This document shows, in pieces, positions 2,417-23,942 of a stretch of 64,000 nucleotides of DNA. Numbering within the stretch: the stretch's first letter is position 1; the number at the start of each line of letters is the position of its first letter. The DNA lies in the IMG/VR virus record IMGVR_UViG_3300040801_002079, positions 1 through 64,000 of that record; one strand, written 5' to 3'. Position numbers and translations under genes: made by a program. The notes under the pieces are model-generated. The model worked only from the letters and a program-made list of their open reading frames with translations, did no database searches and was not told the origin of the DNA.

Positions 2417-3150
2417 AGCATATTCCTCGGTGTCTTGAAAGGGGCTGTATATCGGGCAGTTCCATTAGTGAATCGCCACATAGCTATTTCACCATCAATG
2501 CTACCATTACTATCCCAATCTAAAATTCCCATGCCATTGGTAGAATAACTATGATCCATATCTGTTGTGCTACCATCTAAATACCCGTCAATCCAAAGCT
2601 TAGTTACTCCGCTTTCCCTTGTAACCGCAATATGATGCCATTCACCATCTGATACATTGATAGTACCTTCAAGCGGATATGTGCCAATAAATAAATCCAC
2701 TTGCGTAAGAATCATTATTCTTGGGTTGCCAGTTCCATTATCTGCTAAGCGATCATTAGCCCAGAGTGAGGGTGCCTGACTTACAATACTTCCACTTGTA
2801 GTTTTAAGCCATGACTCGACGGTGTAATCTCCAGTTCCTATATCAAGTGCTGGGTCATCATCAATACCTATACCTTGTGCTGCTGAACGAGTAAATACAA
2901 AAGAAGGTATGCCTGATGCAAAACCATCTACTGTTTTCGTCACACTTCCAAGATTTGTAAGAGTAATTCCATTACCTGCATCATTAACTGCTAGATCAGA
3001 CTGCATTAGCACAGTTGGAGCAACATTAGGTAAAGGTGTTCCGACTTTACCATTTGGGCCATAGGCAATAACTCCGTGAAGTAAATCTGATGCTTCAACA
3101 GTTGCATCACTTGTAATATAAGCTTTTTTAAGATCAGAAAGATTACCCAT
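2413..3150 (-). CDS. LamG domain protein
   Basis: GTGDYTVESWLK...DGEWHHIAVTRESG...LWIDG...WRFTNGTARYTAPF; start moved to the ATG at 3150, which overlaps the upstream stop (MGNLSDL resembles MTNLSTH of the next gene). Confidence 0.75.
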   Translation of the reverse strand: MGNLSDLKKAYITSDATVEASDLLHGVIAYGPNGKVGTPLPNVAPTVLMQSDLAVNDAGNGITLTNLGSVTKTVDGFASGIPSFVFTRSAAQGIGIDDDPALDIGTGDYTVESWLKTTSGSIVSQAPSLWANDRLADNGTGNPRIMILTQVDLFIGTYPLEGTINVSDGEWHHIAVTRESGVTKLWIDGYLDGSTTDMDHSYSTNGMGILDWDSNGSIDGEIAMWRFTNGTARYTAPFKTPRNML

Positions 3151-5005: not shown

Positions 5006-5860
5006 TTATTCCTCTAATATCGGATTACCCGACTCATCTAATATAGTTCCACCAGATTCATCTAAGAATGCTCCACCAACTCCGCCCGATGGTGTTGGGG
5101 TTACCGTATTCGTTGGAGTAACCGTAGGAGTAGCAGTAGCTGTATTAGCTGGTGTAACGGTTGGAGTAATCGTTTGTGTTGGAGTTACTGTATTTGTTGG
5201 AGTTACTGTATTTGTTGGCGTAACGGTTGGAGTAACGGTTTGGGTCGCTCCAATGGATGCCGTAGGAGTAACGGTAGCTGTAGGAGTAACGGTTTGTGTG
5301 GGTGTAACGGTCACAGTTGGAGTTACTGTAGCTGTAACAGACGGGGTTGGTGTAACAGTAGCTGTAACTGTTGGCGTAACAGTAGCTGTAACTGTTGGTG
5401 TAGCTGTGGTCGTAGGCGTAACTGTCGGAGTAACTGTGCTCGTTGGAGTAACCGTAACCGTTGGTGTAACAGTGCTCGTTGGTGTAACAGTGCTCGTTGG
5501 TGTCACCGTTGGAGTAGATGTTAATGTTGGAGTTGGAGTTGGAGATGGGTTAATAACATCGTCACATTCGCAGTTCTGGTTAGTATAAAACAACACATTA
5601 CAAAACCCAGATTGCTCATCAAAGAATTCAATAACAATAGTATCATTATCTTCAATTACAATAGACTCTGGAATCAATAAACTACCAGTATCATCAAACA
5701 CTTGAATGTTAATTGATTCTGTATCATATACATGATTTAATGTCCAAACACTACTCTTCTCCGTAAATAAAAACTGTTCCAATTTTACACAAAGTTTATG
5801 AGACTTACTTATTACATAGCCCCCGGTTTTGGTGTCAACAAATAATTTACCTAGTCTCAT
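5006..5860 (-). CDS. Putative virion protein with long Thr/Pro/Val low-complexity stalk
   Basis: About 150 aa of TPTVT repeats; N-terminal WTLNH...VFD...IVIEF module; acidic C-terminal LDESG repeat. Confidence 0.65.
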   Translation of the reverse strand: MRLGKLFVDTKTGGYVISKSHKLCVKLEQFLFTEKSSVWTLNHVYDTESINIQVFDDTGSLLIPESIVIEDNDTIVIEFFDEQSGFCNVLFYTNQNCECDDVINPSPTPTPTLTSTPTVTPTSTVTPTSTVTPTVTVTPTSTVTPTVTPTTTATPTVTATVTPTVTATVTPTPSVTATVTPTVTVTPTQTVTPTATVTPTASIGATQTVTPTVTPTNTVTPTNTVTPTQTITPTVTPANTATATPTVTPTNTVTPTPSGGVGGAFLDESGGTILDESGNPILEE

Positions 5861-5864
5861 AATA

Positions 5865-6782
5865 TTATCCTGATACCGTTGGGGTTATAGTCATAGTCGG
5901 TGTAACCGTTTGTGTTGGAGTTACCGTATTCGTTGGTGTAACCGTTGGTGTAACTGTTTGTGTAGCCGCAACAGTGGGCGTAACTGTTTGTGTAGGCGTA
6001 ATAGTTGGTGTTAATGTTGGTGTCACCGTTGGTGACGGCGTAATAGTAGCAGTGACTGTCGGTGTTGCAGTATTTGTAGGAGTCACTGTCGGAGTTACTG
6101 TGCTTGTAGCTGTAAGTGTTGGGGTCACACTATGAGTTGGTGTAACAGATGGATCAGGAGTGACCGCAGCCGTCTGTGTTGGAGTATTCGTTGGTGTTAC
6201 ATCAGGTGTAGCCAGCGGTGTAACGGTAACAGTTGCCGTCATAGTCGGGGTTAAAGTTGGGGTCTGTGTAGATGCAGCCGTTGGAGTTGGTGTAAGGGTA
6301 TTCGTTGGTGTTACATCTGGGGTTGATGTTTGTGTTGGCGTAACCGTAGCAACAGGGGTAGCTGTAGCTGTAGGAGTAACAGTATTTGTTGGTGTTAAAG
6401 TTGGAGTAACGGTTACGGTCGGAGTTAATGAAGGCTCTGGTGCCAAGCTAACATACTCATAGCCGCAAACGTATATAAAAGTGAACCGCACCATGACTCC
6501 CGGCTCAATTCTTTTTCCAAATGTAATAGTAGCTGAACTGGCTGTATAAGTTATTTTTTCAGGAATTATTAATTTTGGTTTATTATCAATGCCGTGGCTA
6601 TATTCGTATATTTGCGTTAACAGGACATCAACTGCTCTGGGCAGATTAACAGTGTGAGTTAATGGTGGAGATATTGCCGTTGTTGTAAAACCAATGCATG
6701 AACAGTCTTTGCCCTCTCGCAAGACAAGCTCACCGGTATACGCATCATACTGAACTTCTTTAAATGTAGAGATAAAATCCAT
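5865..6782 (-). CDS. Putative virion protein with long Thr/Pro/Val stalk
   Basis: About 185 aa of TPT repeats; late promoter-like AATAAATA just upstream. Confidence 0.65.
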
Positions 6783-6871
6783 CTATAATTCCTGTTATAG
6801 ATGTATTTATTAAAAAGGTGTGGCTATAATTCCTTATGGATACCCTATTCCAGAACCACCAATCCCTGTTA

Positions 6872-9175
6872 TTAAGATGGGGTTGGTGTGATGGTTGGAG
6901 TAACGGTTGAAGTAACAGTCTGGGTTGGTGTAACTGTACTAGTGACAGTAACAGTTGGAGTAACCGTGGTTGTGGGTGTAACGGTTGGGGTTAGGCCAGT
7001 TGTAACAGTCGGGGTAACGGTTTGTGTTTGCGTTGGTGTAACTGTTGTAGTTGGCGTAACAGTTGGACTCAAACCTGTTGTAACAGTTGGTGTTGGAGTA
7101 ACTGTACTGGTAGCAGTAATAGTCGGAGTAACAGTTGGAGTGACTGTAGTAGTTGGAGTGACTGTAGCCGTAACCGTAGGAGTTACGGTAGGGGTAACGG
7201 TTAGTCCACCATCTATTATGGTCCAATTATATCCCACTAATAATAATTCTTTTCCATCTACTGGCGCACCCGTGGAATATGTAGCTGACCCAGCATGTAA
7301 TGTAACACTTGAATTTAATGCCTGAGTGGGCCAAGATGTTAATAGCTTATCATAGTTAGTTTCATCAAACGCTGATCCCAGCATTAAATTGGAAAAATCA
7401 TATATTTTCTCAATATTCCATCCGGATACGTCTGGATTAGCAAGTGATGCGCCATTAAATATACCCACAGCATCCACTAGATTCGATGTTATCCAATTGC
7501 TAACATCCGGATTAGCACTTGTTGCATCAGCAAACATGTTAGTCATATCTGTAACATTGGATACGTCCCAATTTGAAACATCGGGATTAGCACTTGCCGC
7601 CCCACTGAACATTTCTCTCATATCGGTAACAGATGATACATTCCACACAGTAACATCGGGATTAGCATTAGTTGCGTTTTTGAACATCTCTGACATATCA
7701 ACAACATTGGATACATTCCAGTTAGCAACATATGGGTTAGCCGTGCTATCCATAAACATTTGCTGCATATTTGTAACTTGCGATATGTTTGGAGCATCCG
7801 TTGCGGTTATTGATAGGTTGGAGCACCCGTAAAATGCCGCACTAAGCGAAGTAAATATCACACTACCCCACTGAGAAACGTCAGTAATCTTATCCTTACT
7901 TCCAGAATTATTGAAGAACCATGCGGGGCATGACCCTACAATTGAAACCGTATATGTGCCCGGACTAGCATATTGGTGTGTAGCGTTGAGCGCATTCCAA
8001 AACGTAACCGTACTCTGTGACCCATCTCCCCAGTCAACAAGCATGTTATAGGAATAACCTTCGCGTAACGGAAGCGTTATTGTTTCATTTGGAGCCGATG
8101 TTGCCCACGTTGTTATAAACGGTTCCGGTGCACCAGAAGCAGTTGGTGTAATTGTGGGAGTTATGGTTTGTGTGGGAGTCACTGTTGGCGTTACAGTTAA
8201 TGCTGGAGCAACATTCGTCAAGACATGTATTTTTTCTTGGATATTAACCAATATGGTGTTTGGTGAAACAACTTTAGCCATGACTTGAGAGCTTTCTTCA
8301 TCTCCAATATCAGTGGTTAAATTGCCCAGTTCATCAACAAAAAGGTTGTGGTTCTCAGGGACGGTCCAATTCCAGTCCTCTCGGTTTTCAACAAAGCCTC
8401 CCGTAATGAGGTGTACCTTTTCCCCAACATTGTAAGCCTTATCTGTTATTCCTATAGCGGCTCTAAATCCATTTCTTGAACCATGATAAACTCTACCATC
8501 ATCACCAATGACAACGCATTTATTCCGACCTAACGCTTCCCCAGCAACAGCATTTAACTGCAATCTATCAAATGATACCTTCTGACTATTTGAAAATGTG
8601 TTATCAAGTGAGTCTATTTCAGTTGCAAAATATTTTGTTCTATCCTTATCATTAGAAAAACTGAAAACGGGACGATCACTTCTATCGAATAATATGGGTC
8701 CAACTCTTCGTTCTATTTTTAAATTACACTGAGAGTAAACTCCAAGCTCGTTTAATTCGCCGTTTTTCCAGTGTGCGGCAAACATTCGTATATGCGTTAT
8801 CCATCTGCCGCCATTCCAAATTTTTAATTTATTATCAGTTCTATCAAAAAAGTGTTGACCCTTAACAGGTGAAGGGGGCAAGGTTGATCCGTAATCTAAT
8901 GGGTTATGAATAGTTGTTGTTCCATATTTTAATTGACCCGTTATTCGGTCAATTTCCCAATATAGCCAAACCGAATCTTCATTTTTAGGAAGCACCCATG
9001 CCTCTTCTACATCTTCCTTTATGGTGTGCAAATAATCTCTTTTACCATGTGCAAATGATAATATAATGTTTGTTTTATTAGCACGAAGACCGACAACTCC
9101 ATTCTTTTCATATAGCATGGAGGGCAAAGTTGGTTTGGATATTATGCCTTGTCGGAAGTACGTTTTCATACTCAA
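6872..9175 (-). CDS. Multidomain virion protein: capsid-cement-like domain, PKD-like domain, DUF285/BspA-like repeats, Thr/Pro stalks
   Basis: AVAGEAL...AIGIT...W..LFV cement-like module; VDWGDG...HQYASPGTYTVSI; repeated NPDVSNWDVSNVTDMxxMF. Confidence 0.7.
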   Translation of the reverse strand: MSMKTYFRQGIISKPTLPSMLYEKNGVVGLRANKTNIILSFAHGKRDYLHTIKEDVEEAWVLPKNEDSVWLYWEIDRITGQLKYGTTTIHNPLDYGSTLPPSPVKGQHFFDRTDNKLKIWNGGRWITHIRMFAAHWKNGELNELGVYSQCNLKIERRVGPILFDRSDRPVFSFSNDKDRTKYFATEIDSLDNTFSNSQKVSFDRLQLNAVAGEALGRNKCVVIGDDGRVYHGSRNGFRAAIGITDKAYNVGEKVHLITGGFVENREDWNWTVPENHNLFVDELGNLTTDIGDEESSQVMAKVVSPNTILVNIQEKIHVLTNVAPALTVTPTVTPTQTITPTITPTASGAPEPFITTWATSAPNETITLPLREGYSYNMLVDWGDGSQSTVTFWNALNATHQYASPGTYTVSIVGSCPAWFFNNSGSKDKITDVSQWGSVIFTSLSAAFYGCSNLSITATDAPNISQVTNMQQMFMDSTANPYVANWNVSNVVDMSEMFKNATNANPDVTVWNVSSVTDMREMFSGAASANPDVSNWDVSNVTDMTNMFADATSANPDVSNWITSNLVDAVGIFNGASLANPDVSGWNIEKIYDFSNLMLGSAFDETNYDKLLTSWPTQALNSSVTLHAGSATYSTGAPVDGKELLLVGYNWTIIDGGLTVTPTVTPTVTATVTPTTTVTPTVTPTITATSTVTPTPTVTTGLSPTVTPTTTVTPTQTQTVTPTVTTGLTPTVTPTTTVTPTVTVTSTVTPTQTVTSTVTPTITPTPS

Positions 9176-9178
9176 TAT

Positions 9179-10648
9179 TTATCCAGACTGTGTTGGCGTT
9201 ATTGTGGGTGTAACCGTCAATGTAGGAGTAACACTTGGGTCGGGGGTTACTTGTGGGGTTACAGTTGGCGTAGCCGTTGGATTCGGGGTGACCGTCATTG
9301 TTGGGGTTACAGTATTTGTTGGGGTGACCGTTGGTGTAACCGTTGATGTAGCCGTTACAGTCGGTGTAACAGTTGGATTTGGTGTAACGGTCTGAGTAAT
9401 TGCTGGCGTTGGTGTTAGTGTTTGAGTTGGAGTTACCGTTGGGGTAACTGTCGCTGTTACACTGATAGTTGGTGTTACAGTTGGCGTTACAGTATTTGTC
9501 GGTGTATTCGTTGGTGTAACTGTTGGCGTTGGGGTTGGACTCAACACTGGGGTTAATGATGGTAATGGTATAGTAATTTCGGGAGTAGGGGGAATCTCCG
9601 TAATTGGAGTTCTTCCCGGTGCATTTTTAACATCCGGATAGGTATTTTCTCTATTGCGGGTCGCCGTATATAGTTCACCATTTTCAAATATAAAATAATC
9701 ATATTGTGTTTTCAACATTTCACCAACATCAATAAGCTTGTTTTTTATTTTATCAACAGATGCATATGGTTCCTTTGAGAGAAGAATAAACAATCCTCTG
9801 CTTGGAATGTCCTGAAATCCCTCGAAATCATCATCAAAATCATAATCAATTTTTAAGAACCGTATTATTGTCCCGTTTGGAATCCCGGTTAAATCAAGTT
9901 CAACATCACTGAATGTTCTAAAATTGGATAAACTTTTACCTTTGGTTGTGTAATGCCTTCGATTTCTTACTAATATCCTATCCCATCCAATCCATGCAGT
10001 ATCGGCCCCATCATCAAACTCTTCAAAGCATGTGACCGGCTCTTCATTGGGTCTCACTGTTTGAATTTCTACAGCTATTCGTTTATCCAGTGTATTAAAA
10101 GGCGTAGGAACAGTTGAATCGGGATATTCAACTATAATTTCAGGTACCGCAATTGTTAATTTACCATTTGATGTTACCTTGACCGGATTCTCAATAGGCT
10201 TAATGAGTTTGGGATTTGAGGGGACAGTGGTTCTAGCCATACAATGTGCTATACCAACTCTGGGTATATCAAAAGCAATGGTTAATGAATCCCTATCCGT
10301 TACCGTCACAGTGTATTGATCTTGATCAAGAATGCGGTAGCCACCATCAATTTGTTCATAAACTACAACAGTGGGTGATGACGATAAGCTATGAAACACT
10401 TTCCATGTTTTAGTAGCAACTGATTGATTATGTTTATATAATAACTTGCGAGGGAAATAGTCTCTTACACCCTCTTGTATGGGAGGAAATGATTCTCTGA
10501 TATTACTAGCGTCTCTTTTAACTTTATAAAGGTTTCCCCTACAGCCATCTGTAATGATACATTTTGAAAATACAGTTAATCCCTCTGTATTCTCAATTTT
10601 ATCAATTTCTCTTTTACAGGTGTTGCACTTATAAGTTATTGTAGACAT
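9179..10648 (-). CDS. Putative virion protein with N-terminal Cys motif and C-terminal Thr/Pro stalk
   Basis: CNTC...C...C N-terminus; WKVFHSL module; about 120 aa of TPT repeats; GATAAATA late promoter at 10671-10678. Confidence 0.65.
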   Translation of the reverse strand: MSTITYKCNTCKREIDKIENTEGLTVFSKCIITDGCRGNLYKVKRDASNIRESFPPIQEGVRDYFPRKLLYKHNQSVATKTWKVFHSLSSSPTVVVYEQIDGGYRILDQDQYTVTVTDRDSLTIAFDIPRVGIAHCMARTTVPSNPKLIKPIENPVKVTSNGKLTIAVPEIIVEYPDSTVPTPFNTLDKRIAVEIQTVRPNEEPVTCFEEFDDGADTAWIGWDRILVRNRRHYTTKGKSLSNFRTFSDVELDLTGIPNGTIIRFLKIDYDFDDDFEGFQDIPSRGLFILLSKEPYASVDKIKNKLIDVGEMLKTQYDYFIFENGELYTATRNRENTYPDVKNAPGRTPITEIPPTPEITIPLPSLTPVLSPTPTPTVTPTNTPTNTVTPTVTPTISVTATVTPTVTPTQTLTPTPAITQTVTPNPTVTPTVTATSTVTPTVTPTNTVTPTMTVTPNPTATPTVTPQVTPDPSVTPTLTVTPTITPTQSG

Positions 10649-10652
10649 AAAA

Positions 10653-10688
10653 TTCCCATCCGGATATTGGTATTTATCCGGATGGGAA
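10653..10688 (-). promoter_or_regulatory. 14-bp hairpin overlapping the late promoter and RBS of 9179..10648
   Basis: ttcccatccggata / tatccggatgggaa perfect inverted repeat; GATAAATA spans the loop and upstream arm. Confidence 0.7.
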
Positions 10689-10708
10689 ATTCCTTAACTT
10701 CAACTATT

Positions 10709-11041
10709 TTAAGAAGATTTCTTTAAAATAGTTTCGATAAGGTCGTTTGCCTTTTTGACCTCTTGTGAGGCAAGACACGCGGGGCCGCGCTGAAGATCAT
10801 CGATAATGTAAGCAAAATCGATTTGCGCATGATAAAGGGTATAATCAACCCCCTCATCATAAATGGCTGCGTTAGTCTTGCTATCACGCATAACGAAAGT
10901 GGCAAAGCGCTTGTTGTTCTTTTTCATATGATCCCAATATGCATTGGAAGCATTACGAAAAGCCTTGCGGAGACCACGAACAGCCTTCTGCACTTGTTCT
11001 TTCGTAAATGAGGACTCATTGGTTACTGTGTTATCAGACAT
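10709..11041 (-). CDS. Hypothetical protein (early-type)
   Basis: 110 aa ORF with AGGA RBS and consensus sigma70 promoter upstream. Confidence 0.6.
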   Translation of the reverse strand: MSDNTVTNESSFTKEQVQKAVRGLRKAFRNASNAYWDHMKKNNKRFATFVMRDSKTNAAIYDEGVDYTLYHAQIDFAYIIDDLQRGPACLASQEVKKANDLIETILKKSS

Positions 11042-11116
11042 AGTAATTTCCTATGAGTGCAGATTAAGAATCGAACCTGCTTCGATATGACAGTCCCCAT
11101 GACCATCACAGCGCCT

Positions 11117-11144
11117 ATTATACTGATATTTTATTTCATGTCAA
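11117..11144 (-). promoter_or_regulatory. sigma70-type promoter
   Basis: TTGACA-N16-TATAAT followed by GC-rich AGGCGC. Confidence 0.75.
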
Positions 11145-11190
11145 CCCTTGAATATAAATAATATTGAATTTATAGGCAGAGGAATACAAA

Positions 11191-12087
11191 ATGACCAAAT
11201 TATACTTCACACTTTATAAAATAACTAACTTAATAAACGGCAAATATTATATTGGAACTCATCGAACATATAATTTGAATGACTCATATATGGGATCAGG
11301 TCATATTATAAAACGGGCCATTAAAAAACATGGGGTATCAAATTTCAAAAAAGAAATATTGTTTGTATTTGATACTGAAGAAGAAATGTTCTATAAAGAG
11401 AAAGAAATAGTAAACGAAGAATTTATCAAAAATGATCAAACATATAATTTGCATATTGGTGGAAAGGGGGGATGGAATAAAAATATGGTATCAACCTCAT
11501 GTGGTAAACATGTACCAATACATGAATTTAAAAGTGGGGGATATAATGGTACATGTAAGTATAAAGTTCCAGTATTTAATACATTGGATGGAACGCATTT
11601 ACATGTGGACCAGAATGAATATTATAAAAATCCATATTTAAAACCAATTATGCACAAAAATGGAACCGTAAGTGTGGTGGATGATGATGGAAACTTTAAA
11701 AAAATTACAAAAGCGGAATATGAAGCATCTTCAAAATGGAAATCAATTACTACCAATAAAGTATCGGCTAAAACCCCTAGTGGGGAATTTATACAGGTTG
11801 ATAGGGATGAGTTTTTAAATACACCGGAGCTAGTTGGTGTAACACATGGTAAGAGTTATAAAACTAAAACATATAAAATATTTGATGCCAATGGGGTACA
11901 ACAGTATTATGTTAAGGATAAAAATTTTAGGGAATATCTTAGGATGAATAATCTACCCCCCGCATTTATTCATTCATACCGTTCAAATGGGACCCCAATA
12001 TACTTAAATCTGGGACCTAACAAGAAACGGTTAAAACAGCGAGGGTGGTTGAAATATAGTGGGTGGTATGCTATAATGTGTGAATAA
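11191..12087 (+). CDS. GIY-YIG (Seg-like) homing endonuclease
   Basis: TLYKITNLINGKYYIG...YMGSG...YNLHIGG; TATAAATA upstream. Confidence 0.85.
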   Translation: MTKLYFTLYKITNLINGKYYIGTHRTYNLNDSYMGSGHIIKRAIKKHGVSNFKKEILFVFDTEEEMFYKEKEIVNEEFIKNDQTYNLHIGGKGGWNKNMVSTSCGKHVPIHEFKSGGYNGTCKYKVPVFNTLDGTHLHVDQNEYYKNPYLKPIMHKNGTVSVVDDDGNFKKITKAEYEASSKWKSITTNKVSAKTPSGEFIQVDRDEFLNTPELVGVTHGKSYKTKTYKIFDANGVQQYYVKDKNFREYLRMNNLPPAFIHSYRSNGTPIYLNLGPNKKRLKQRGWLKYSGWYAIMCE

Positions 12088-12109
12088 ATTGTAGTACACG
12101 GGGAAAAAT

Positions 12110-13099
12110 ATGTATAAATTTTCATCAATTGGTAGATTTAGAAACGCATTCAACTGTGTTCATCGGTTTTGTAATGAAACTGGAAAATCGGTTCCGGTAT
12201 ATGATTATATTGGGACAGTAAAACTGCATGGCACGAATGCGGGAATAAGAAGAACTCCGAGCGGAAAACTTGTCCCTCAGTCTCGTAATAGAATCCTAGA
12301 CACAACTAGTGATAATTACGGGTTTGCAGAATTTGTAAAACAACGGGAAAATGAGGTTCATCGCATATTTGATAGTATAAAGGGGTTGGATAATGATACC
12401 ACAATAACCATTTTTGGAGAATTTTGTGGAGGCAGCATCCAATCTAATGTTGCCCTCTCGCAATTATCCCCACACTTTGTTTTATTTAACGTTAAGTTTG
12501 ACGGTGAATATAATGAGTTGTGGTACCCGTTTCCGGTTGAACTGCAAGCAAACGATGTTGATATTTACAATATCTTCCAGATTCCACATTATGAAGTTAG
12601 TGTAGACTTTTCAGCACCTGATGCCGCAATTCATGAAATCAATGAATTAACCGATGCAGTTGAAAAGCAGTGCCCGTGGGGTAAATTCATGGGCGTTGAT
12701 GGAATTGGTGAAGGTATCGTTTGGGTGCCTAAGTCAAACCCATCAATCTCTGATCTTTGGTTCAAAACCAAGGGTGGAAAGCACTCTGGTAAGCCAAAGG
12801 TTAAGGGAATCAGAGCTAAAGTTGATGTTGAAACAGCAAACTCTATTGCTGAATGCATGAAGTTGGTTCTGCCCGAATGGAGACTGCAACAGGGTATCGA
12901 ATACTTGAAAGAAAACTACTACGATATGGATCACAGTTCCATCGGTCCATACTTGAAGTGGATCAGTCAGGATATCCTGAAAGAAGAAATTGATACGATA
13001 ACTGAAAATGGGTTGGAATGGAAAGACATGCACCGTCCAATTAACAAACGTGCACGTAACTACATTCTGGACGTTATCGAAAACGATTTCAGTGTGTAA
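12110..13099 (+). CDS. RNA ligase, Rnl2-like family
   Basis: Motif I KLHGTN, SRNR, IFGEFCG, GEGIVW, FKTK. Confidence 0.85.
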   Translation: MYKFSSIGRFRNAFNCVHRFCNETGKSVPVYDYIGTVKLHGTNAGIRRTPSGKLVPQSRNRILDTTSDNYGFAEFVKQRENEVHRIFDSIKGLDNDTTITIFGEFCGGSIQSNVALSQLSPHFVLFNVKFDGEYNELWYPFPVELQANDVDIYNIFQIPHYEVSVDFSAPDAAIHEINELTDAVEKQCPWGKFMGVDGIGEGIVWVPKSNPSISDLWFKTKGGKHSGKPKVKGIRAKVDVETANSIAECMKLVLPEWRLQQGIEYLKENYYDMDHSSIGPYLKWISQDILKEEIDTITENGLEWKDMHRPINKRARNYILDVIENDFSV

Positions 13100-13114
13100 T
13101 GGTATGGAGGGGAG

Positions 13115-14206
13115 TTATCCCCTCCAGTATCTTGACAACACTGGGTCTCTAACCTGATGTGGTCTAGGTGGCCCATGAAAACAAATGATTTTAGATTCCG
13201 GGGGTATCTCAATCACCCCGCCATTTTTAACACAATCTTTTTTATATGAAACCACCTGTTTGGGATATAGGTCCTGAACATAATCCATGTTCTTTCCCAA
13301 AACCCCACCAATAAACTCTTGATCGCCAAAGCGATTGTTGTTCATGTTAGCAGTGGGGTTTTCCATGAACCGCTCATAAATTTGAAATAGTTTTGGGTTA
13401 TCATTCTTCCAGCACATTAGCCCGCTGCCAAGACCGTATTGATGGTAAAAGTCTCTAAGGCCAAAGAATTCTCCCCCATACTTTATAATGTCATCAATGT
13501 TGCGCAAAATTATGGTGTCTAAATCGACATAAAATATTTTAGATGTATTGAATTTTCCGGGCTTGAAAAGCTCTATTTTTCCCCACCACTTGGGTAAATC
13601 AGAGTCAAATTGCATGATTTGATGAACATTCCCACAAAACCCATCAGACAAGTCTGTTAAGCAAACAAATTTATATGGGAGGGTAACGTTTTCTTTAATT
13701 GAATTTGCAATGTGGTTAACATAATCTACAGTATAATCTCCCCCACTTTTTAGCACAGTGGCGATTGTTACTGAATTCTCGTTAAGTGGGTGCATTGCTT
13801 TCTTTTCTGGATCAAAACATTTAACGATAAGGTTATGTTCTCTTTTGCCATTCAACAGCATCTGTCTAGCTTCTGTTATATTTGGAGATTTAGCCTTAAG
13901 AAATTTAGTTATTATTCGATCTGACGGAAGTCCGGTTTTTCCATAGGATGAGAAAAATATAGTCCCACCATAGGAGACTCTTTCCCATGCTTTTTCCAAA
14001 ACAGGTTCGGTAAGTGTTTTACTGTTTAAAAATATAAGACAATAGGTAGTATCATCCTCTATAGATGTGTGTACCACTCTAGCGGAAGCCGAACTGATGG
14101 TTTCCATATTTTTAAACGCAGCAGCATGGTCCAGATTTATTAAGCACACTTCGCCCTCATATCGCAAAGCATCATTTAAATGGTTGTTTAATCTCCAGAG
14201 GTTCAT
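13115..14206 (-). CDS. GT-A glycosyltransferase (GT8-like) with degenerate methyltransferase-like N-terminus
   Basis: FVCLTD, WWGKIELF, YVDLD (DxD), GDQEFI, CFHGPPRP. Confidence 0.8.
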   Translation of the reverse strand: MNLWRLNNHLNDALRYEGEVCLINLDHAAAFKNMETISSASARVVHTSIEDDTTYCLIFLNSKTLTEPVLEKAWERVSYGGTIFFSSYGKTGLPSDRIITKFLKAKSPNITEARQMLLNGKREHNLIVKCFDPEKKAMHPLNENSVTIATVLKSGGDYTVDYVNHIANSIKENVTLPYKFVCLTDLSDGFCGNVHQIMQFDSDLPKWWGKIELFKPGKFNTSKIFYVDLDTIILRNIDDIIKYGGEFFGLRDFYHQYGLGSGLMCWKNDNPKLFQIYERFMENPTANMNNNRFGDQEFIGGVLGKNMDYVQDLYPKQVVSYKKDCVKNGGVIEIPPESKIICFHGPPRPHQVRDPVLSRYWRG

Positions 14207-14841
14207 TTTAGAAATTCCTGTAACGCATAATGTGGAGTATAACGAGGAAACGATGTCACTGAACTATTGGGACTCCCGTTTATAACCGTTATACCAGCAT
14301 CTCGTAATTGCGGAACTGCCCCTTCAAATAAATCCGGTAGGTGATCCAGAGCATTATTGGTTCGGGTGGTCGTGTAGTAATATCCAATATCCCCATCAAT
14401 GCCCAATAGTAATATTTTTTCAGGTCTCATATGATAAGCCAAGCCTAGTGCTCCATAACCTGAATTTCCTGTATGTATAGTTGTAGGGTCTTCAGATAGC
14501 CCATCCCCATGAACCCGTCTTAAGTATTTAATATCGGCGGTAGGCTTGATTCTATGGTTTCGTATTTTTGATTCTGGTGTTGCAAAATCTTCAGGCACCG
14601 CAGCATAAAGCTGACCCTTAAATCGATGTCCCGGAAGTTGAGGACCATATAGTCCCCATGGATCAAGAGTGAACCACGCATCAGCAAATGGTGCATGTTT
14701 CCCTGATTCGTTTATGGTTATAATGAAACAATCTTCGCGGTGCAGTAAGCCAAAACTGAACCCATTAAGACTGCGCCCCCCTCCAATTATAACAATTCTT
14801 TTAGTATGCACTATGGGGGAAATCATCGAATATGAAATCAC
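14203..14841 (-). CDS. Glycosyltransferase-like protein (Maf/DUF115/sialyltransferase-type fold)
   Basis: IIGGGRSL, ITINES, GNSGYGALGLAYHM...ILLLGID, VINGS. Confidence 0.65.
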   Translation of the reverse strand: MISYSMISPIVHTKRIVIIGGGRSLNGFSFGLLHREDCFIITINESGKHAPFADAWFTLDPWGLYGPQLPGHRFKGQLYAAVPEDFATPESKIRNHRIKPTADIKYLRRVHGDGLSEDPTTIHTGNSGYGALGLAYHMRPEKILLLGIDGDIGYYYTTTRTNNALDHLPDLFEGAVPQLRDAGITVINGSPNSSVTSFPRYTPHYALQEFLK

Positions 14842-15488
14842 TTCATTAAGCCCTTTACATTTTTCTTTTTAAAGCACGTTATCGCACTCGTTCGAGAACA
14901 GTTTATAACTTCAGTGCCAATTCTGCGTTTTTTAAGTTCTTTATTTAATGCTTCAATTGATGGAATGAATAACCGGGAGTATGTGTCGTGTCGAATAACA
15001 ACCTGATGAGCATCATGCCAATGTGTTGTCCCTCTTGAAAGAGGATCATCCCTCATGTCAAACCCTATTAAGTACACCCGCTTAGCTCCAAGGTTTACAG
15101 CGAAATTTAAAGCTTGTGTACCCCCATTGTTCCCCATAACATTATCAATGTTGGGATCATAGCCATACTCTCCTGTTCTATTTAATATAGTCGATCCTGC
15201 TGGCCCTGTTATATCCTTTTTAATATGAGTTTCAGCATATGTTCGAGGATGGAATCTTAACTCACATTCGTGTTTTTGTAATCCATCCATCTCTCTCCCA
15301 CACCATGAGTTATCGCACCAAAATAATGCAGTAGCGTTAGGTAATATTTTATATGAATCGTTAATGGCAATGGTAACCCTGTCTGTTAAAAAATCAAGAT
15401 TAACCTCACGAACACTATATCCCCCGCCAACTATAAATATATCTTGACCGAAGGACTTATCGTACATTTTTTGAATTTGTTGTCGCAT
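14838..15488 (-). CDS. Glycosyltransferase-like protein, paralog of 14203..14841
   Basis: IVGGGYS, IAINDS, GNNGGTQALNFA...VYLIGFD, VINCS; start trimmed to MRQQIQK. Confidence 0.65.
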   Translation of the reverse strand: MRQQIQKMYDKSFGQDIFIVGGGYSVREVNLDFLTDRVTIAINDSYKILPNATALFWCDNSWCGREMDGLQKHECELRFHPRTYAETHIKKDITGPAGSTILNRTGEYGYDPNIDNVMGNNGGTQALNFAVNLGAKRVYLIGFDMRDDPLSRGTTHWHDAHQVVIRHDTYSRLFIPSIEALNKELKKRRIGTEVINCSRTSAITCFKKKNVKGLMK

Positions 15489-15538
15489 AATAATTTTTGG
15501 TTTATTTTTATGAAAATATTTATAGGAAATAATAATAA

Positions 15539-16045
15539 ATGATTCCAACAATAGCAAATGAATGCTCACAGTTTATATCCGAATCTGACGGCAAATATTT
15601 AGTAAAAAATCTGCCAGTATCTTATCAGGGATTCTCAAAAGTAAAGGTACGCTTCAAAAAGCAGACTACAGACTTTATTGAAAACTTCAATGAAGCATTT
15701 AAAAATAAAAGTCATGACCTTCACCAGAGGGCAATTTTTGCCTATACCGATATTTCATTGCTGACAGAGAATCGGCAGCAAGAGCCGTTTTACATATTTC
15801 CAATAAATGGGTACAAAGTTTTATTCAATCCACTGGTTCAGAATTCAGAAAATGATTTTCAATCATATGAAGACCTTTCAATTGATGGCGATATAATTAC
15901 AGATCAACTTAAAATTTCATACGAAGCTGGCTCATTATGTGAGGCAATGGATTCCAACTGTGAAGTAGTTCTATACGGTATAAAATACTATTACGCTATA
16001 CGATCATCCCTCATAAGCGATTATAAACTATTCTTTAGCGAATAG
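15539..16045 (+). CDS. Hypothetical protein
   Basis: 168 aa ORF, no motif recognised. Confidence 0.55.
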   Translation: MIPTIANECSQFISESDGKYLVKNLPVSYQGFSKVKVRFKKQTTDFIENFNEAFKNKSHDLHQRAIFAYTDISLLTENRQQEPFYIFPINGYKVLFNPLVQNSENDFQSYEDLSIDGDIITDQLKISYEAGSLCEAMDSNCEVVLYGIKYYYAIRSSLISDYKLFFSE

Positions 16046-16097
16046 AACATTGGTTTTCCAATAAATACGTTAAGATATTAACGTTAAAGGTAAAACA

Positions 16098-16583
16098 ATG
16101 AAACTCACAGAGCTTTTTCTTTCTAATTCCGACGAACAACTACTAATAGAAATGCCTTATGAGGAGGCTAAAGTTGTTCAGTATGTAATGAACCACGTTA
16201 TGCGAAAATATATGAAACTTAGCTTTGATATGTCCGGACATATGGAAAAGAGAGTTTTACCCTATGAAGATGAAAGACGAAAACAGCTTAAACATGATGA
16301 TGTGGAGAAGGATAAACCGCGAGAAGAGGATATAACAAAAGAGGAGCTTTTTACCATATTCAATAAAGTTGTAAAAAATGATGAAAATCGTCAAAAAATA
16401 TTAAAGCATCGGGGAAAGGGGAAAGAAATTGAAGGCACCATAAAAGACCATGAAACGAACATTAATATTGTGTTTAAAGTTGCGTATCAACACAAAACCC
16501 AATTTCCTGTATTCCGAATAATAACTCTCATGAGAAAGAAAGGGTTTGTTCCAAAAAGGGGGGATATTGTAATCAATGTCTGA
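16098..16583 (+). CDS. Hypothetical late protein with capsid-targeting-like N-terminus
   Basis: AATAAATA upstream; starts MKLTELF...LLIE. Confidence 0.55.
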   Translation: MKLTELFLSNSDEQLLIEMPYEEAKVVQYVMNHVMRKYMKLSFDMSGHMEKRVLPYEDERRKQLKHDDVEKDKPREEDITKEELFTIFNKVVKNDENRQKILKHRGKGKEIEGTIKDHETNINIVFKVAYQHKTQFPVFRIITLMRKKGFVPKRGDIVINV

Positions 16584-17199
16584 ACTTTTTTACAAATATA
16601 ATCCCGGTGACATTGTTTGGATACGACACGATGGTGAAGTAAAAAAATGTACAGTGTGTCGGGCGGTATTTGAAGTTGACCCGTCATTATCGGGCGTAAC
16701 AGAAGAGAAAGATTATCACCTTGATATAGTGGGCGATAATACATCCAAGATCGTAATTCGGGCCGAGCCTGATGTGTATGAAACAGCATTAGATGCCATA
16801 GAAAAAAATTCACCAACAAATCCATTAAAGTCAATAACTTATGATTTTGATGTTAACTCGACTGCTTGGTCTTACACTGGTGAATATATAGACTTTGAGG
16901 CAACAGTAACACAGATAACAATCAATCTGGTCGAATCGAAAATTGAAATTTTATATCATCTATTAGCTACAAATGGGGAATATAGAACATTAATCCACGA
17001 TAGTGACATTGTTTTTGCAACCCAACAAGAAGCACTGGATGCTATAGCCGCAATCATTACTCCAACCCCAACTATGACCGCAACCCCAACATTGACTCCC
17101 ACAGAAACTCCGGAGATTACACCAACAATAACACCAACAATAATGCCATCACAAACCGTAACGCCCAATCCAACTGTAACGCCAACACAATCGGGATAA
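16576..17199 (+). CDS. Protein with two SH3/KOW-like repeats and Thr/Pro tail
   Basis: YKYNPGDIVWI and YDFDVNSTAWSY repeats; TPT tail. Confidence 0.6.
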   Translation: MSELFYKYNPGDIVWIRHDGEVKKCTVCRAVFEVDPSLSGVTEEKDYHLDIVGDNTSKIVIRAEPDVYETALDAIEKNSPTNPLKSITYDFDVNSTAWSYTGEYIDFEATVTQITINLVESKIEILYHLLATNGEYRTLIHDSDIVFATQQEALDAIAAIITPTPTMTATPTLTPTETPEITPTITPTIMPSQTVTPNPTVTPTQSG

Positions 17200-17202
17200 G
17201 CA

Positions 17203-17979
17203 ATGCATATTGTAAACTACAATTATCAAGCAGGGGACCGAGTTTGGATATCAGTTGATGATAATTCAATGGAGTGTGTTGTCTGTAAGGTTTACATAGA
17301 AGTTGATCCTGATGAAGTTGAAACAAAGATAGAAAGAAAAACTTATCATCTGGCGAATGTGAATGGATCATCTGTTGTGTATATTCGTGATGAGTCTGAG
17401 GTTTTTCAATCTTTAACTGATGCACTTGATTATATTGATGATCCAACACTGACTGCACCAGAAACAACAAATTACAGCTTTGTATATAACTATGATGTTG
17501 GTCAAACCGTATGGACATATGATGGGCATGAACCACTAGAAAGTACAGTCCTGCAAATAAGTATATACAACGAAAGAACAGATGGAGTAACCTCGAATAA
17601 TTTGGTATATCACACACTGCCCGTTAGTGAAGATTATAAAACACTGTTAAAAGAAGAGCCTGACATATTTCCAACATATGAAAAGGTTATGGAATATATA
17701 ACTGCGGTTGTATTGGAAGTAACGTTAACCCCAACGGTTACTGCGACACAAACCGTAACACCAAACCCAACCGTGACTCCAACATTGACCCCCACACTAA
17801 CTGTAACCCCAACACTTACATTAACACCAACACTTACAATGACTCCAACCATAACTCCAACCATAACTCCAACCATAACCCCGACATCTACATTAATGTT
17901 AGAAGGAGAGGATATATGGAGTATAGAGGATGAGGATATTCTAATGTTTGCAAACGGGGATATAGCTAAATATGTTTAA
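17203..17979 (+). CDS. Paralog of 16576..17199 with Thr/Pro stalk and acidic C-terminal tip
   Basis: YNYQAGDRVWI and YNYDVGQTVWTY repeats; TPT stalk; LMLEGEDIWSIEDEDIL. Confidence 0.6.
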   Translation: MHIVNYNYQAGDRVWISVDDNSMECVVCKVYIEVDPDEVETKIERKTYHLANVNGSSVVYIRDESEVFQSLTDALDYIDDPTLTAPETTNYSFVYNYDVGQTVWTYDGHEPLESTVLQISIYNERTDGVTSNNLVYHTLPVSEDYKTLLKEEPDIFPTYEKVMEYITAVVLEVTLTPTVTATQTVTPNPTVTPTLTPTLTVTPTLTLTPTLTMTPTITPTITPTITPTSTLMLEGEDIWSIEDEDILMFANGDIAKYV

Positions 17980-23012: not shown

Positions 23013-23089
23013 GCGGGTGTAGCTCAATTTGGTGGAGCGCAACCTTGCCAAGGTTGAGGCTGTGGGTTCGAGTCCCATCACCCGCTCCA
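23013..23089 (+). tRNA. tRNA-Gly(GCC)
   Basis: Full cloverleaf: acceptor GCGGGTG/CACCCGC, anticodon arm CAACC-TTGCCAA-GGTTG, TTCGAGT loop, encoded CCA. Confidence 0.95.
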
Positions 23090-23941: not shown

Positions 23942-23942
23942 A

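What the first reader, a model, noticed from the sequence alone, without database searches (positions are those of the whole stretch)
5006..17979. Mucin-like Thr/Pro stalks on six putative virion proteins flanking three glycosyltransferases: candidate phage glycocalyx
Seen: six genes (5006, 5865, 6872, 9179, 16576, 17203) carry roughly 45-190 aa TPTVT repeats with varied synonymous codons, which points to protein-level selection rather than recent slippage. Between the two clusters sit a GT8-like gene and two Maf/sialyltransferase-fold genes (13115-15488) in one overlapping operon. Established: Pro/Thr linkers of bacterial cellulases are O-glycosylated, and some actinophages glycosylate their virions with their own enzymes. 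Inference: dense O-glycosylation gives rigid, protease-resistant stalks that shield the particle or extend the lectin and adhesin tips.
Basis: partly seen in the sequence, partly recalled or inferred. Interest (0 to 1): 0.78.

Follow-up and report, generated by a model that had tools for sequence, protein, structure and literature searches.

The report
Thr-Pro tailed fibre proteins beside glycosyltransferases
A giant phage from a metagenome carries six proteins with long threonine-proline tails around a three-enzyme sugar-transfer cassette, and relatives suggest, without proving it, that the phage sugar-coats its own fibre proteins.

Summary
Six ORFs, and no others in the 64 kb window, carry 51-193 aa tracts of strict alternating Thr-x (x = Pro, Val and others). 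They flank three overlapping genes: two Maf/WaaZ-type sialyltransferase-fold enzymes and a GT8-like transferase.

The window is the first 64 kb of a 316.8 kb IMG/VR jumbo-phage contig related to Xanthomonas phage XacN1.

In all cassette-bearing relatives the cassette sits directly upstream of, and on the same strand as, two fibre-like gene families (orthologues of g9179 and g6872). In XacN1 and Xoo-sp13 this block runs into the tail-sheath genes. XacN1 virions contain periodate-Schiff-positive proteins.

The cassette is a single insertion into a wider phage group. Loci with it mostly have Thr-Pro proteins nearby (13 of 17); loci without it mostly do not (3 of 23). That is one evolutionary event, not independent evidence.

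Evidence against a tight link:
- Thr-Pro tracts are scattered across the XacN1 genome.
- They occur in at least 119 other viral loci, almost all without this cassette nearby.
- Three cassette-bearing relatives lack the tails.
- The enzymes' closest characterised look-alikes also include LPS-core enzymes.
- In four of the six proteins the tract is the C-terminal end, so it is a tail and not a stalk holding a tip.

Verdict: virion O-glycosylation is plausible but unproven (about 0.45). It would be a new variant of a known kind.

The parts
5006..5860 (-). g5006, 284 aa. It has a small beta domain (aa about 25-92, also found in L007 and L011), a Thr-x tract at aa 100-261 (nt about 5078-5563), and a 23-aa acidic C-terminal peptide (LDESGGTILDESGNPILEE).
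5865..6782 (-). g5865, 305 aa. N-terminal domain of about 112 aa, then a Thr-x tract at aa 113-305 that runs to the C-terminus (nt 5868-6446).
6872..9175 (-). g6872, 767 aa. Conserved N-domain (aa 1-320, family shared with L002b, L003a/b, L004b/d, L005b, L007a, L008a), short Thr-x linker (aa 320-352), DUF285/PARCEL repeat domain (aa about 354-640), and a C-terminal Thr-x tail (aa 655-767).
9179..10648 (-). g9179, 489 aa. Conserved 345-aa N-domain with a four-Cys zinc-ribbon-like start followed by Ig-like beta sandwiches. It is orthologous to the N-terminal parts of XacN1 ORF370 and ORF372 and of Xoo-sp13_332. A 147-aa Thr-x tail (aa 343-489) runs to the C-terminus.
10709..11041 (-). Small conserved ORF (110 aa). 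A 12/12 sigma-70 consensus match lies upstream (11144-11117) and a 14-bp-stem terminator-like hairpin downstream (10688-10653), just before the g9179 start. It is an ancestral neighbour of g9179-like genes.
11191..12087 (+). GIY-YIG (SegE-like) homing endonuclease. It is the mobile insert between the cassette and g9179.
12110..13099 (+). RNA ligase (PF09414). It neighbours g9179-like genes in several cassette-less relatives (L225, L228, L229, L243, L246).
13115..14206 (-). GT8-like glycosyltransferase, 363 aa. The C-terminal GT domain (aa about 145-362) has invariant D228-L-D230 and F343-H-G-x-P347. The N-terminal about 140 aa are a remnant of a TylF-type methyltransferase domain that lacks about 65 residues compared with 434-aa relatives.
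14203..14841 (-). Maf/MptE-like enzyme B, 212 aa (phrog_2111). It overlaps the GT8 gene by 4 nt.
14838..15491 (-). Maf/MptE-like enzyme A, 217 aa from the likely start (phrog_4603 'alpha-2,3-sialyltransferase'). The AF2 model has pLDDT 86.6.
15539..16045 (+). Conserved 168-aa protein of unknown function (faint DUF2441-like resemblance). It is next to g9179-like genes in nearly all the relatives examined, and the cassette lies between the two.
16576..17199 (+). g16576, 207 aa. N-domain paralogous to that of g17203, then a Thr-x tail at aa 157-207 that runs to the C-terminus.
17203..17979 (+). g17203, 258 aa. N-domain, Thr-x tract at aa 176-234, then a 24-aa acidic C-terminal peptide.
189..4970 (-). 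Continuation of the same minus-strand block. It holds a 606-aa protein with a weak PHROG 'minor tail protein' hit, two LamG/ConA-like lectin-domain proteins, and a 498-aa protein.
18008..21646 (+). 1212-aa Gly-rich protein. It shares a 276-aa region (27% identity) with the 606-aa protein at 3150-4970. It is a probable fibre or spike component.

Best explanation
The region is the host-adhesion (fibre) module of an XacN1-like jumbo myophage.

Shown:
- The ancestor of this clade acquired, once, an accessory glycan-building cassette. It lies between two core genes, the w15539-like gene and the g9179-like gene.
- The cassette encodes two short Maf/WaaZ-type enzymes (sialyltransferase-like fold, the kind that uses CMP-activated ulosonic acids such as Kdo or nonulosonic acids) and a retaining GT8 hexosyltransferase.
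- In some relatives it also encodes a GT2, a hexapeptide acetyltransferase, a KpsC/S-like enzyme and an intact TylF-type methyltransferase domain.

Inferred:
- The enzymes act in the cytoplasm late in infection on the phage's own fibre-like proteins.
- The period-2 Thr-x tracts (PT-box-like, extended) are the most likely acceptors. A Maf-like enzyme would start the chain on Thr and GT8 would extend it.
- The result would be glycosylated, extended, protease-resistant tails and linkers on the virion surface.
- The window encodes no sugar-nucleotide genes among the ORFs scanned, so donors would come from the host (for example UDP-hexose and CMP-Kdo).
For: 1. Enzyme identities.
- The GT8 profile matches 6mw5 (Skp1 glycan alpha-GalT, E 3.5e-6), 5gvv (a Streptococcus GT8; I recall it as GlyE, which extends a serine-rich-repeat adhesin's glycan) and glycogenin. 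The DxD and H-G-x-P motifs are invariant.
- The Maf-like model's best solved match is the Maf flagellin glycosyltransferase 5mu5 (Z 13.3, 183 residues), followed by Cst-I/II sialyltransferases.
- Maf enzymes put Neu5Ac and Kdo on Ser/Thr of flagellin in the cytoplasm (bioRxiv 10.1101/2020.06.03.131540).

2. Synteny.
- In 16 of 17 cassette-bearing loci, and in the cultured phages XacN1 and Xoo-sp13, the order is Maf-A, (optional enzymes), Maf-B, GT8, g9179-like. A g6872-like gene follows in many of them. One locus (L221) has only a Maf-like gene.
- All are on one strand. In most loci the GT8 gene abuts the g9179-like gene with a gap of a few to a few tens of bases. Exceptions are the window, L002 and its duplicates, and three loci with gaps of about 0.3 kb.
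- In XacN1 and Xoo-sp13 the block runs into the tail-sheath stabiliser and tail-sheath genes.

3. Variable enzyme content of the cassette is typical of loci that diversify surface glycans.

4. XacN1 virions contain at least two periodate-Schiff-positive proteins (PMC5852040).

5. Loci with the cassette mostly have Thr-x ORFs in the flank (13 of 17). g9179-like loci without it mostly do not (3 of 23).

6. In unrelated phages, 148 genes within 2.5 kb of Thr-x ORFs include three PF11397 genes, each close downstream of a Thr-x ORF, adjacent in two of the three loci. From memory, PF11397 is the polypeptide Thr/Hyp GlcNAc-transferase family. The set also includes GT2 x2, RgpF and sugar-nucleotide enzymes.

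7. The tails are under strong purifying selection for exact length and landmarks.
Against: - No direct evidence shows that any protein of this phage is glycosylated. The identities of the XacN1 glycoprotein bands are not available, and XacN1 has other GTs (ORF328, ORF334) that its authors credited.
- The association between cassette and tracts is one event on the g9179 tree (1 change, support 100/100), so the 13/17 against 3/23 contrast is not independent evidence.
- Thr-x tracts occur in about 15 XacN1 ORFs spread over 255 kb.
- They also occur in at least 119 other viral loci. Only 2 of these have a Maf-like gene, and none a GT8-like gene, in the fetched flank.
- Three cassette-bearing loci have no Thr-x ORF in the flank (L218, L219, L220), and several g9179 orthologues lack the tail.
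- In this window the cassette is separated from g9179 by 2.4 kb that includes a terminator-like hairpin.
- The best reviewed structural match of the Maf-like enzyme is WaaZ, an LPS-core Kdo transferase (TM 0.70-0.72). GT8 also includes LPS-core enzymes.
- The same enzyme pair exists in phage P1 (pmgO, pmgQ). I know of no Thr-Pro proteins there.
- The exact length conservation of the tail fits a structural ruler at least as well as a floppy glycan brush.
Confidence: 0.45

Rival explanations
1. The Thr-x tracts are bare PT-box-type linkers and tails, acting as extended spacers or length rulers. The cassette acts on the host envelope instead. A WaaZ-like Kdo transferase pair plus a GT8 would remodel LPS core or another host glycoconjugate late in infection, for example to mask receptors so that progeny are not lost on debris.
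For: - WaaZ of Salmonella and E. coli is the best reviewed structural match (TM 0.70-0.72, E about 2e-7), and the ESM Atlas places the protein with an MptE-like/WaaZ_KDO_III cluster.
- The GT8 family includes the LPS-core alpha-glycosyltransferases (own knowledge).
- The same module sits in the late pmgL operon of P1 (pmgO, pmgQ), whose receptor is LPS core (own knowledge). It also sits in a moron-like position in Citrobacter phage phiNP.
- Thr-x tracts are common without the cassette.
- Tail length is conserved exactly.
Against: - The cassette is conserved on the same strand as the fibre genes, and abuts them in most cassette-bearing relatives.
- In the GT8 profile search the best PDB hits are enzymes acting on protein-linked glycans, and no LPS/LOS GT8 appears in the list.
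- The best solved fold match is Maf, a protein O-glycosyltransferase.
- XacN1 virions do contain glycoproteins.
Confidence: 0.25
2. The cassette does glycosylate virion proteins, but at other sites. Candidates are loops of the conserved g9179-like N-domain, including its short internal TPTxTP loop, or other structural proteins. The long Thr-x tails themselves would be unmodified structural spacers.
For: - The cassette's constant partner is the g9179-like N-domain, not the tail. Orthologues of 332-364 aa lack any tail yet keep the cassette.
- The N-domain alignment shows a conserved Pro/Thr-rich internal loop.
- Tail length and landmarks are conserved like a folded element.
Against: - Cassette-less relatives keep the g9179-like N-domain, so the domain does not need the enzymes.
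- Long Thr-rich tracts are the most obvious acceptor for O-glycosyltransferases.
- GT60-type genes sit next to Thr-x ORFs in other phages.
Confidence: 0.2
3. The enzymes modify phage DNA (glycosylated bases) and have nothing to do with the neighbouring proteins.
For: Phage GTs often modify DNA (general knowledge; also noted in PMC5852040).
Against: - No base-hypermodification genes were seen next to the cassette.
- Neither Maf/WaaZ-type nor GT8 enzymes are known DNA glycosyltransferases (own knowledge).
- The cassette lies in a structural operon.
Confidence: 0.03

Closest known systems
Xanthomonas jumbo phage XacN1 (ORF375-374-373 plus ORF372/370/369) and Xoo-sp13 (genes 335-331)
   Same: - The same three enzymes in the same order (35-50% identity).
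- The same g9179-like N-domain (36-40% identity) directly downstream.
- Thr-x tracts in the downstream proteins.
- Periodate-Schiff-positive virion proteins in XacN1.
   Different: - In those phages the genes are annotated as hypothetical, and the authors credited glycosylation to other GTs.
- Their Thr-x tracts are internal linkers in 600-1400 aa multidomain proteins. In the window most are C-terminal tails on small proteins.
- The window has an RNA ligase, a homing endonuclease and a small ORF between the cassette and g9179.
Maf flagellin glycosyltransferases (DUF115/MptE-like, e.g. PDB 5mu5) and the WaaZ Kdo transferase
   Same: The fold of the central catalytic domain (Z 13.3 to 5mu5; TM 0.70-0.72 to WaaZ). 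Maf acts in the cytoplasm on Ser/Thr of a secreted structural protein.
   Different: - The phage proteins are only 212-217 aa and lack the flanking domains of the 632-residue Maf protein.
- Pfam PF01973 scores below its gathering cut-off (24.5 against 34.6).
- Donor and acceptor are unknown.
PT-box linkers of bacterial glycoside hydrolases (e.g. Cellulomonas fimi CenA/Cex) and PTVT mucin-like repeats of Dictyostelium (own knowledge)
   Same: Period-2 Pro-Thr composition, extended low-complexity spacers, and O-glycosylation on Thr in the native hosts, which protects against proteolysis.
   Different: Those proteins are secreted and are glycosylated outside the cytoplasm or in the Golgi. Here the proteins are made and assembled in the cytoplasm, most tracts are terminal tails, and Val is as prominent as Pro in places.
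Mycobacteriophage virion glycosylation (Freeman et al. 2023, recalled from memory and not re-read here)
   Same: Phage-encoded GT genes embedded in the structural gene block, and O-glycosylation of extensions of virion proteins.
   Different: The host is an actinobacterium, the GT families differ, the targets are capsid and tail-tube C-terminal extensions, and there are no long Thr-Pro repeats.
Phage P1 pmgO/pmgQ late-operon genes
   Same: Homologous pair of a sialyltransferase-like enzyme and a GT8-like enzyme (35% identity to the GT8 domain), expressed from a late promoter.
   Different: There is no g9179-like neighbour and no Thr-Pro proteins that I know of. The function in P1 is unknown ('putative morphogenetic function').

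Membership tests
CAZy GT8 (retaining GT-A hexosyltransferases) | Sequence-profile similarity to solved GT8 enzymes | tested here: met
   A profile of 28 homologues hits 6mw5 (E 3.5e-6), 5gvv (1.6e-4) and glycogenins (0.05). PHROG 1962 'glycosyltransferase' scores 8e-44.
CAZy GT8 (retaining GT-A hexosyltransferases) | DxD metal/nucleotide-sugar motif and C-terminal H-x-G-x-x-K/R-P motif | tested here: met
   D228-L229-D230, F343-H344-G345 and P347 are invariant, and P349 nearly invariant, in 28 sequences. The meaning of the motifs is from my own knowledge of GT8.
CAZy GT8 (retaining GT-A hexosyltransferases) | Pfam PF01501 above the gathering threshold | tested here: not met
   There is no Pfam hit for the window protein. 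Only one distant homologue (P0099) carries PF01501.
Maf / DUF115 / MptE-like (PF01973) sialyltransferase-fold enzymes | Fold of the Maf central catalytic domain | tested here: met
   The AF2 model (pLDDT 86.6) matches 5mu5_A at Z 13.3 over 183 residues, MptE 8sd5 at Z 11.8 and Cst-I at Z 10.3. Foldseek finds Cst-II and MptE.
Maf / DUF115 / MptE-like (PF01973) sialyltransferase-fold enzymes | Pfam PF01973 above the gathering threshold | tested here: not met
   24.5 bits against a cut-off of 34.6 for enzyme A, and no hit for enzyme B. Relatives score 24-29 bits.
Maf / DUF115 / MptE-like (PF01973) sialyltransferase-fold enzymes | Flanking substrate-binding domains of full-length Maf (632 residues in 5mu5) | tested here: not met
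   The phage proteins are 212-217 aa and align only to residues 261-511 of 5mu5.
Maf / DUF115 / MptE-like (PF01973) sialyltransferase-fold enzymes | Transfer of a CMP-activated ulosonic acid to Ser/Thr | not testable with these tools
   This needs an enzymatic assay or glycoproteomics.
WaaZ-type LPS-core Kdo transferase | Structural similarity to WaaZ | tested here: met
   P26473 and P27241 match at TM 0.70-0.72, E 1.7e-7 to 3.3e-7. The Atlas cluster carries PF27901.
WaaZ-type LPS-core Kdo transferase | Curated family model hit and waa-operon context | tested here: not met
   There is no NCBIfam hit. The context is a phage structural operon.
O-glycosylated PT-box / mucin-like linkers | Long low-complexity Thr/Pro-rich tract with period-2 pattern and few charged or aromatic residues | tested here: met
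O-glycosylated PT-box / mucin-like linkers | Glycans actually attached to the tract | not testable with these tools
   The only indirect evidence is periodate-Schiff-positive bands of unknown identity in XacN1 virions.
Phage virion self-glycosylation systems | GT genes embedded in, and transcribed in the same direction as, the structural gene block | tested here: met
Phage virion self-glycosylation systems | The six Thr-x proteins are virion components | tested here: inconclusive
   The g9179 and g6872 families lie next to tail-sheath genes in relatives, and neighbouring genes carry LamG domains of baseplate or virion proteins. There is no evidence for g5006, g5865, g16576 or g17203. The XacN1 proteome figure could not be read.

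The most novel reading that the evidence does not exclude
Jumbo phages of the XacN1 lineage use minimal Maf-like enzymes to O-link host-derived Kdo or another ulosonic acid directly onto the threonines of PT-box tails, and GT8 and optional enzymes then extend the chain. This would give the virion an acidic, sialomucin-like brush made entirely in the bacterial cytoplasm. The homologous pmgO/pmgQ-type module, which is widespread in phages including P1, would be a general and so far unrecognised virion protein glycosylation system.
Probability: 0.2. Interest if true: 0.8.

Novelty: new variant of a known kind. Interest (0 to 1): 0.6.

Why it matters
Self-glycosylation of phage particles is documented for only a few systems, and it affects immune recognition, stability and host interaction.

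If this cassette decorates Thr-Pro tails, three things follow:
- A widespread module would gain a function. At least 560 stretches in IMG/VR encode a relative of the GT8 part, and P1 pmgO/pmgQ belong to it.
- The glycoprotein bands seen in XacN1 in 2018 would be explained.
- There would be a compact, cytoplasmic, three-gene route to mucin-like O-glycoproteins in Gram-negative bacteria.

The hypothesis can be tested directly, because XacN1, Xoo-sp13 and two Stenotrophomonas phages with the same locus are in culture.

If instead the tracts are bare, the exact conservation of a 144-aa low-complexity tail would itself need a structural explanation.

Tried and rejected
- Megablast of 9 kb against 50,697 phage records found nothing.
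- Pfam and NCBIfam gave nothing for most ORFs.
- A single-sequence PDB search with Maf-like A gave only a spurious BurrH repeat hit. Profile searches were weak, with MptE at E 0.006 and 0.28.
- Fold searches with the g9179 N-domain model (pLDDT 75.6) gave only generic Ig-like matches in PDB and only its own orthologues in BFVD. The Atlas feature search was uninformative.
- The Atlas search for the 168-aa conserved neighbour gave only a faint DUF2441 resemblance.
- Literature searches for Thr-Pro repeats, or for glycosylated jumbo-phage proteins, found nothing specific. The 'pmgQ' search found no functional study.
- The identities of XacN1 virion and glycoprotein bands are in figures that are not held as text. 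The RsoM2USA and LucasX papers did not help.
- A PHROG scan of genes flanking GT8-like genes in 64 non-jumbo loci showed head, tail and portal genes at roughly the rate expected for small phages. I treat it as neutral.
- I did not run a 'far from tract' control for the GT enrichment near Thr-x ORFs. The apparent enrichment of 4-6% GT-related genes is therefore uncalibrated.
- Ten further window ORFs contained no sugar-nucleotide genes. The small ORFs beyond about 34 kb were mostly not scanned.
I rebuilt the alignment without it. Two further tries were deferred by the service.
- I rejected the idea that the RNA ligase and the small ORF are insertions. They neighbour g9179-like genes in cassette-less relatives.

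Full report
**Source and setting.** The window is the first 64 kb of IMGVR_UViG_3300040801_002079, a 316,801-bp viral contig. It has about 39% G+C, tRNA genes and replication and nucleotide-metabolism genes (IMPDH/GMP-reductase-type enzyme, ATP-dependent DNA ligase; radical-SAM enzyme, DUF2828/DUF7788, GP88, papain-like protease) typical of a jumbo phage. There is no nucleotide-level match among 50,697 deposited phage genomes. By protein similarity the nearest cultured relatives are Xanthomonas phages XacN1 (384 kb) and Xoo-sp13, and Stenotrophomonas phages CM1 and RAS14.

**The observation.** All six ORFs are present as described. A six-frame scan finds Thr/Pro-rich windows only in these six genes in the whole window. 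A stricter detector for alternating [T/S]-x tracts gives the same six.
- The tracts are 51 to 193 residues long and 71-90% T+P+V+S+A. They contain almost no charged and no aromatic residues, and Thr occupies every second position.
- DNA-level repeats are degenerate, with periods of 12-36 nt and 67-93% matches.
- Thr codon use equals the genome background. Pro codons are skewed to CCA, 68% against 37%.
- The strongest evidence for selection at the protein level comes from the 144-aa tail of g9179. It aligns to its orthologue in L002 without a single gap at 58% identity, exactly the identity of the folded N-domain. Conserved landmarks include TQTVTPNPT, VTPDP and a terminal SG, and 69% of the identical residues are encoded by different codons.
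- This is not a slippage product. It is also more constrained than a mere floppy spacer would need to be.

In g5865, g9179 and g16576, and for the second tract of g6872, the tract is the C-terminal end of the protein. In g5006 and g17203 only a short acidic peptide follows it. Only g6872 has a domain beyond a tract, a DUF285/PARCEL repeat domain lying between two tracts. Most tracts are therefore tails, not stalks that hold a tip.

**The enzymes.** The three genes overlap by 4 nt each.
- *The 363-aa protein.* Its C-terminal two thirds are GT8-like. It matches PHROG 1962 and is homologous to PmgQ/HdmD of P1-like phages. A 28-sequence profile hits the Skp1-glycan alpha-galactosyltransferase 6mw5, the Streptococcus GT8 5gvv and glycogenins. 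DLD and FHGxP are invariant.
- *Its N-terminal part.* The first 140 residues correspond to the region that carries TylF-type methyltransferase hits (PF05711/PF13578) in 420-434 aa relatives. The first 65 or so residues of that domain are missing, so methyltransferase activity is doubtful here.
- *The two small proteins (212 and 217 aa).* These are paralogous MptE-like/DUF115 enzymes. An AlphaFold model of enzyme A (pLDDT 86.6) has these matches:
  - best solved match, the Maf flagellin glycosyltransferase 5mu5 (Z 13.3), followed by MptE, SteA and the Campylobacter sialyltransferase Cst-I;
  - by Foldseek, Cst-II and MptE;
  - best reviewed AlphaFold DB match, WaaZ, the LPS-core Kdo transferase (TM 0.70-0.72), as also suggested by the ESM Atlas.
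The nearest characterised members of that fold use CMP-activated ulosonic acids. One of them, Maf, has been shown to put Neu5Ac and Kdo on Ser/Thr of a cytoplasmic substrate.

**Context in relatives.**
- The gene order is Maf-A, Maf-B, MT/GT8, g9179-like, with g6872-like next in many. It recurs on one strand in the cassette-bearing IMG/VR relatives, in XacN1 (ORF375-374-373-372...) and in Xoo-sp13.
- In XacN1 and Xoo-sp13 the block continues into the tail-sheath stabiliser and tail-sheath genes.
- Some relatives have extra enzymes between Maf-A and Maf-B: a GT2, a hexapeptide acetyltransferase and a KpsC/S-like protein.
- The N-domains of g9179 and g6872 define two families. They are typically followed, at residue 310-380, by a Thr-x tract and then variable C-terminal regions.
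- The g9179 N-domain starts with four invariant Cys and is otherwise made of Ig-like beta sandwiches.
- Neighbouring window genes carry LamG lectin domains that match baseplate and virion proteins of large phages. There are also two large proteins sharing a 276-aa region.
- This is a host-adhesion or fibre module. Only for g9179 and g6872, however, is there even indirect support for virion membership.

**Is the cassette tied to the tracts?**
- *The g9179-based test.* A search with the g9179 N-domain profile retrieved 40 viral loci. Seventeen carry the cassette directly upstream, and 13 of these have Thr-x ORFs in the 6-kb flanks. Twenty-three lack it, and 3 of these have such ORFs (Fisher p 7e-5).
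- *Why that p-value is not evidence.* On a tree of the g9179-like domain the cassette maps to a single branch with 100/100 support. The contrast is one evolutionary event and the p-value is not meaningful as independent evidence.
- *Where the cassette was inserted.* In the cassette-less group the order is (RNA ligase), small ORF, w15539-like, g9179-like. The cassette is therefore an insertion between two core genes. In the window only the GIY-YIG gene is a later mobile insert.
- *Loci without tracts.* Within the cassette clade three loci have no Thr-x ORF in the flank, and several g9179 orthologues are tail-less.
- *XacN1 genome-wide.* In the unique 255 kb of XacN1 about 15 ORFs carry such tracts, including a tandem family of six (ORF232-237). 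Only three or four lie near the cassette.
- *Other phages.* A pattern for [11 protein letters not shown] finds at least 119 stretches in IMG/VR, with median G+C of 35%. Only two have a Maf-like gene, and none a GT8-like gene, in the flank. The carriers are typically about 640-aa proteins with internal tracts and binding-type domains.
- *Conclusion.* The tract is a general linker type of environmental phages. If it is glycosylated, the enzymes act in trans, and different phages use different enzymes.
- *A hint in that direction.* Among 148 genes within 2.5 kb of such ORFs there are three PF11397 genes, each close downstream of a Thr-x ORF (adjacent in L133 and L167; one gene between in L090). 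As far as I recall, PF11397 is the polypeptide Thr/Hyp GlcNAc-transferase family. There are also two GT2, one RgpF and several sugar-nucleotide enzymes. I could not calibrate this against a proper control.

**Experimental anchor.** The XacN1 paper reports at least two periodate-Schiff-positive virion proteins. It attributes them to two other annotated GTs, and ORF369-375 are listed as hypothetical (PMC5852040).

**Explanation and rivals.** I favour, at about 0.45, cytoplasmic O-glycosylation of fibre-module proteins by this cassette, with the Thr-x tracts as the main acceptors.
- *Shown:* enzyme folds and motifs, operon structure, conserved synteny with fibre genes, single insertion, variable enzyme content, and purifying selection on the tracts.
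- *Inferred:* the acceptor, the donor, the order of action and the effect on the particle.
- *Main rival (0.25):* the tracts are bare PT-box-like spacers and the enzymes remodel LPS or another host glycoconjugate. This rests on the WaaZ resemblance, on GT8 including LPS-core enzymes, and on the same pair (pmgO, pmgQ) sitting in a late operon of phage P1 and in a moron-like position in phiNP.
- *Second rival (0.2):* virion proteins are glycosylated elsewhere, for instance on the g9179-like domain, which is the cassette's constant partner.
- *DNA modification* is unlikely (0.03).

**Comparison with known systems and novelty.** Each element is known separately: PT-box or mucin-like O-glycosylated linkers, Maf-type Ser/Thr glycosylation, GT8 extension of protein-linked glycans, and phage-encoded virion glycosylation in actinophages. 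What appears undescribed is their combination. I found no description of it, although the literature search was limited. The combination is:
- a minimal Maf/WaaZ-like pair plus GT8, conserved at the head of the fibre operon of a jumbo-phage clade whose fibre proteins carry Thr-x tracts;
- homology to an uncharacterised module widespread in phages.

I rate it a new variant of a known kind, with moderate to good interest, mainly because it can be tested directly in cultured relatives.

Noticed in passing
window 10653-11144 (- strand): A perfect 12/12 sigma-70 consensus (TTGACA-16-TATAAT, 11144-11117) and a 14-bp-stem terminator-like hairpin (10688-10653) bracket the small ORF 10709-11041. The ORF is conserved next to g9179-like genes in many relatives. 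It looks like a self-contained, host-RNAP-read unit inside a late structural block.
   Followed up: partly
window 11191-13099 (+ strand): A GIY-YIG (SegE-like) homing endonuclease sits directly upstream of an RNA ligase gene. The RNA ligase neighbours g9179-like genes in several cassette-less relatives, so the endonuclease is the likely mobile insert.
   Followed up: partly
window 5078-9622 and 17044-17904 (the tracts): Pro codons inside the tracts are 68% CCA against 37% in ten other long genes, while Thr and Val codons follow the background. The cause is unknown; it could be a translation or a DNA-level constraint.
   Followed up: no
L090 3372-4619, L133 2845-4116, L167 4652-5914: In three other viral contigs a PF11397 'Glycosyltransferase (GlcNAc)' gene (E down to 1e-72) lies close downstream of Thr-Pro-tract ORFs on the same strand. 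It is directly adjacent in L133 and L167, and one gene lies between in L090. This is a second, unrelated pairing of a GT with such tracts.
   Followed up: partly
XacN1 AP018399.1 124048-133104 (L209): Six tandem paralogues (ORF232-237, about 400-750 aa) each carry a Thr-x tract at about aa 210-290. Further tracts occur in ORF174, ORF180, ORF190, ORF325, ORF350 and ORF384. The tract is a genome-wide linker in this lineage.
   Followed up: partly
window 5027-5082 and 17905-17976: g5006 and g17203 end in short acidic peptides after the tract (LDESGGTILDESGNPILEE; EGEDIWSIEDEDILMF...). The first is an imperfect 24-nt tandem repeat. Their function is unknown.
   Followed up: no
window 23013-24028: tRNA-Gly(GCC) and tRNA-Leu(TAG) flank a His-Me/HNH endonuclease ORF (23456-23941). 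A phage lysozyme gene lies just upstream (22533-22970).
   Followed up: no
window 3150-4970 (-) and 18008-21646 (+): The 606-aa and 1212-aa proteins on either side of the region share a 276-aa homologous segment (27% identity; N-terminal in one, C-terminal in the other). This suggests module exchange between fibre or spike genes.
   Followed up: no
window 5174-5588, 6160-6462, 6888-7325, 9066-9395, 16956-17168, 17634-17876: Long antisense ORFs reading GVTVGV... are mirror images of the Thr-x tracts and should not be annotated as genes.
   Followed up: yes
Phage P1 NC_005856.1 79592-82150 (L204): The late pmgL operon of P1 contains pmgO (sialyltransferase-like) and pmgQ (GT8-like). These are homologues of the cassette enzymes, and their function is still listed as 'putative morphogenetic'.
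   Followed up: partly
window 34872-35570 and 38749-42344: A papain-like cysteine protease (also present near the cassette in XacN1 as ORF382), a DUF2828/DUF7788 protein and a GP88-family protein lie downstream. They were not examined further.
   Followed up: no
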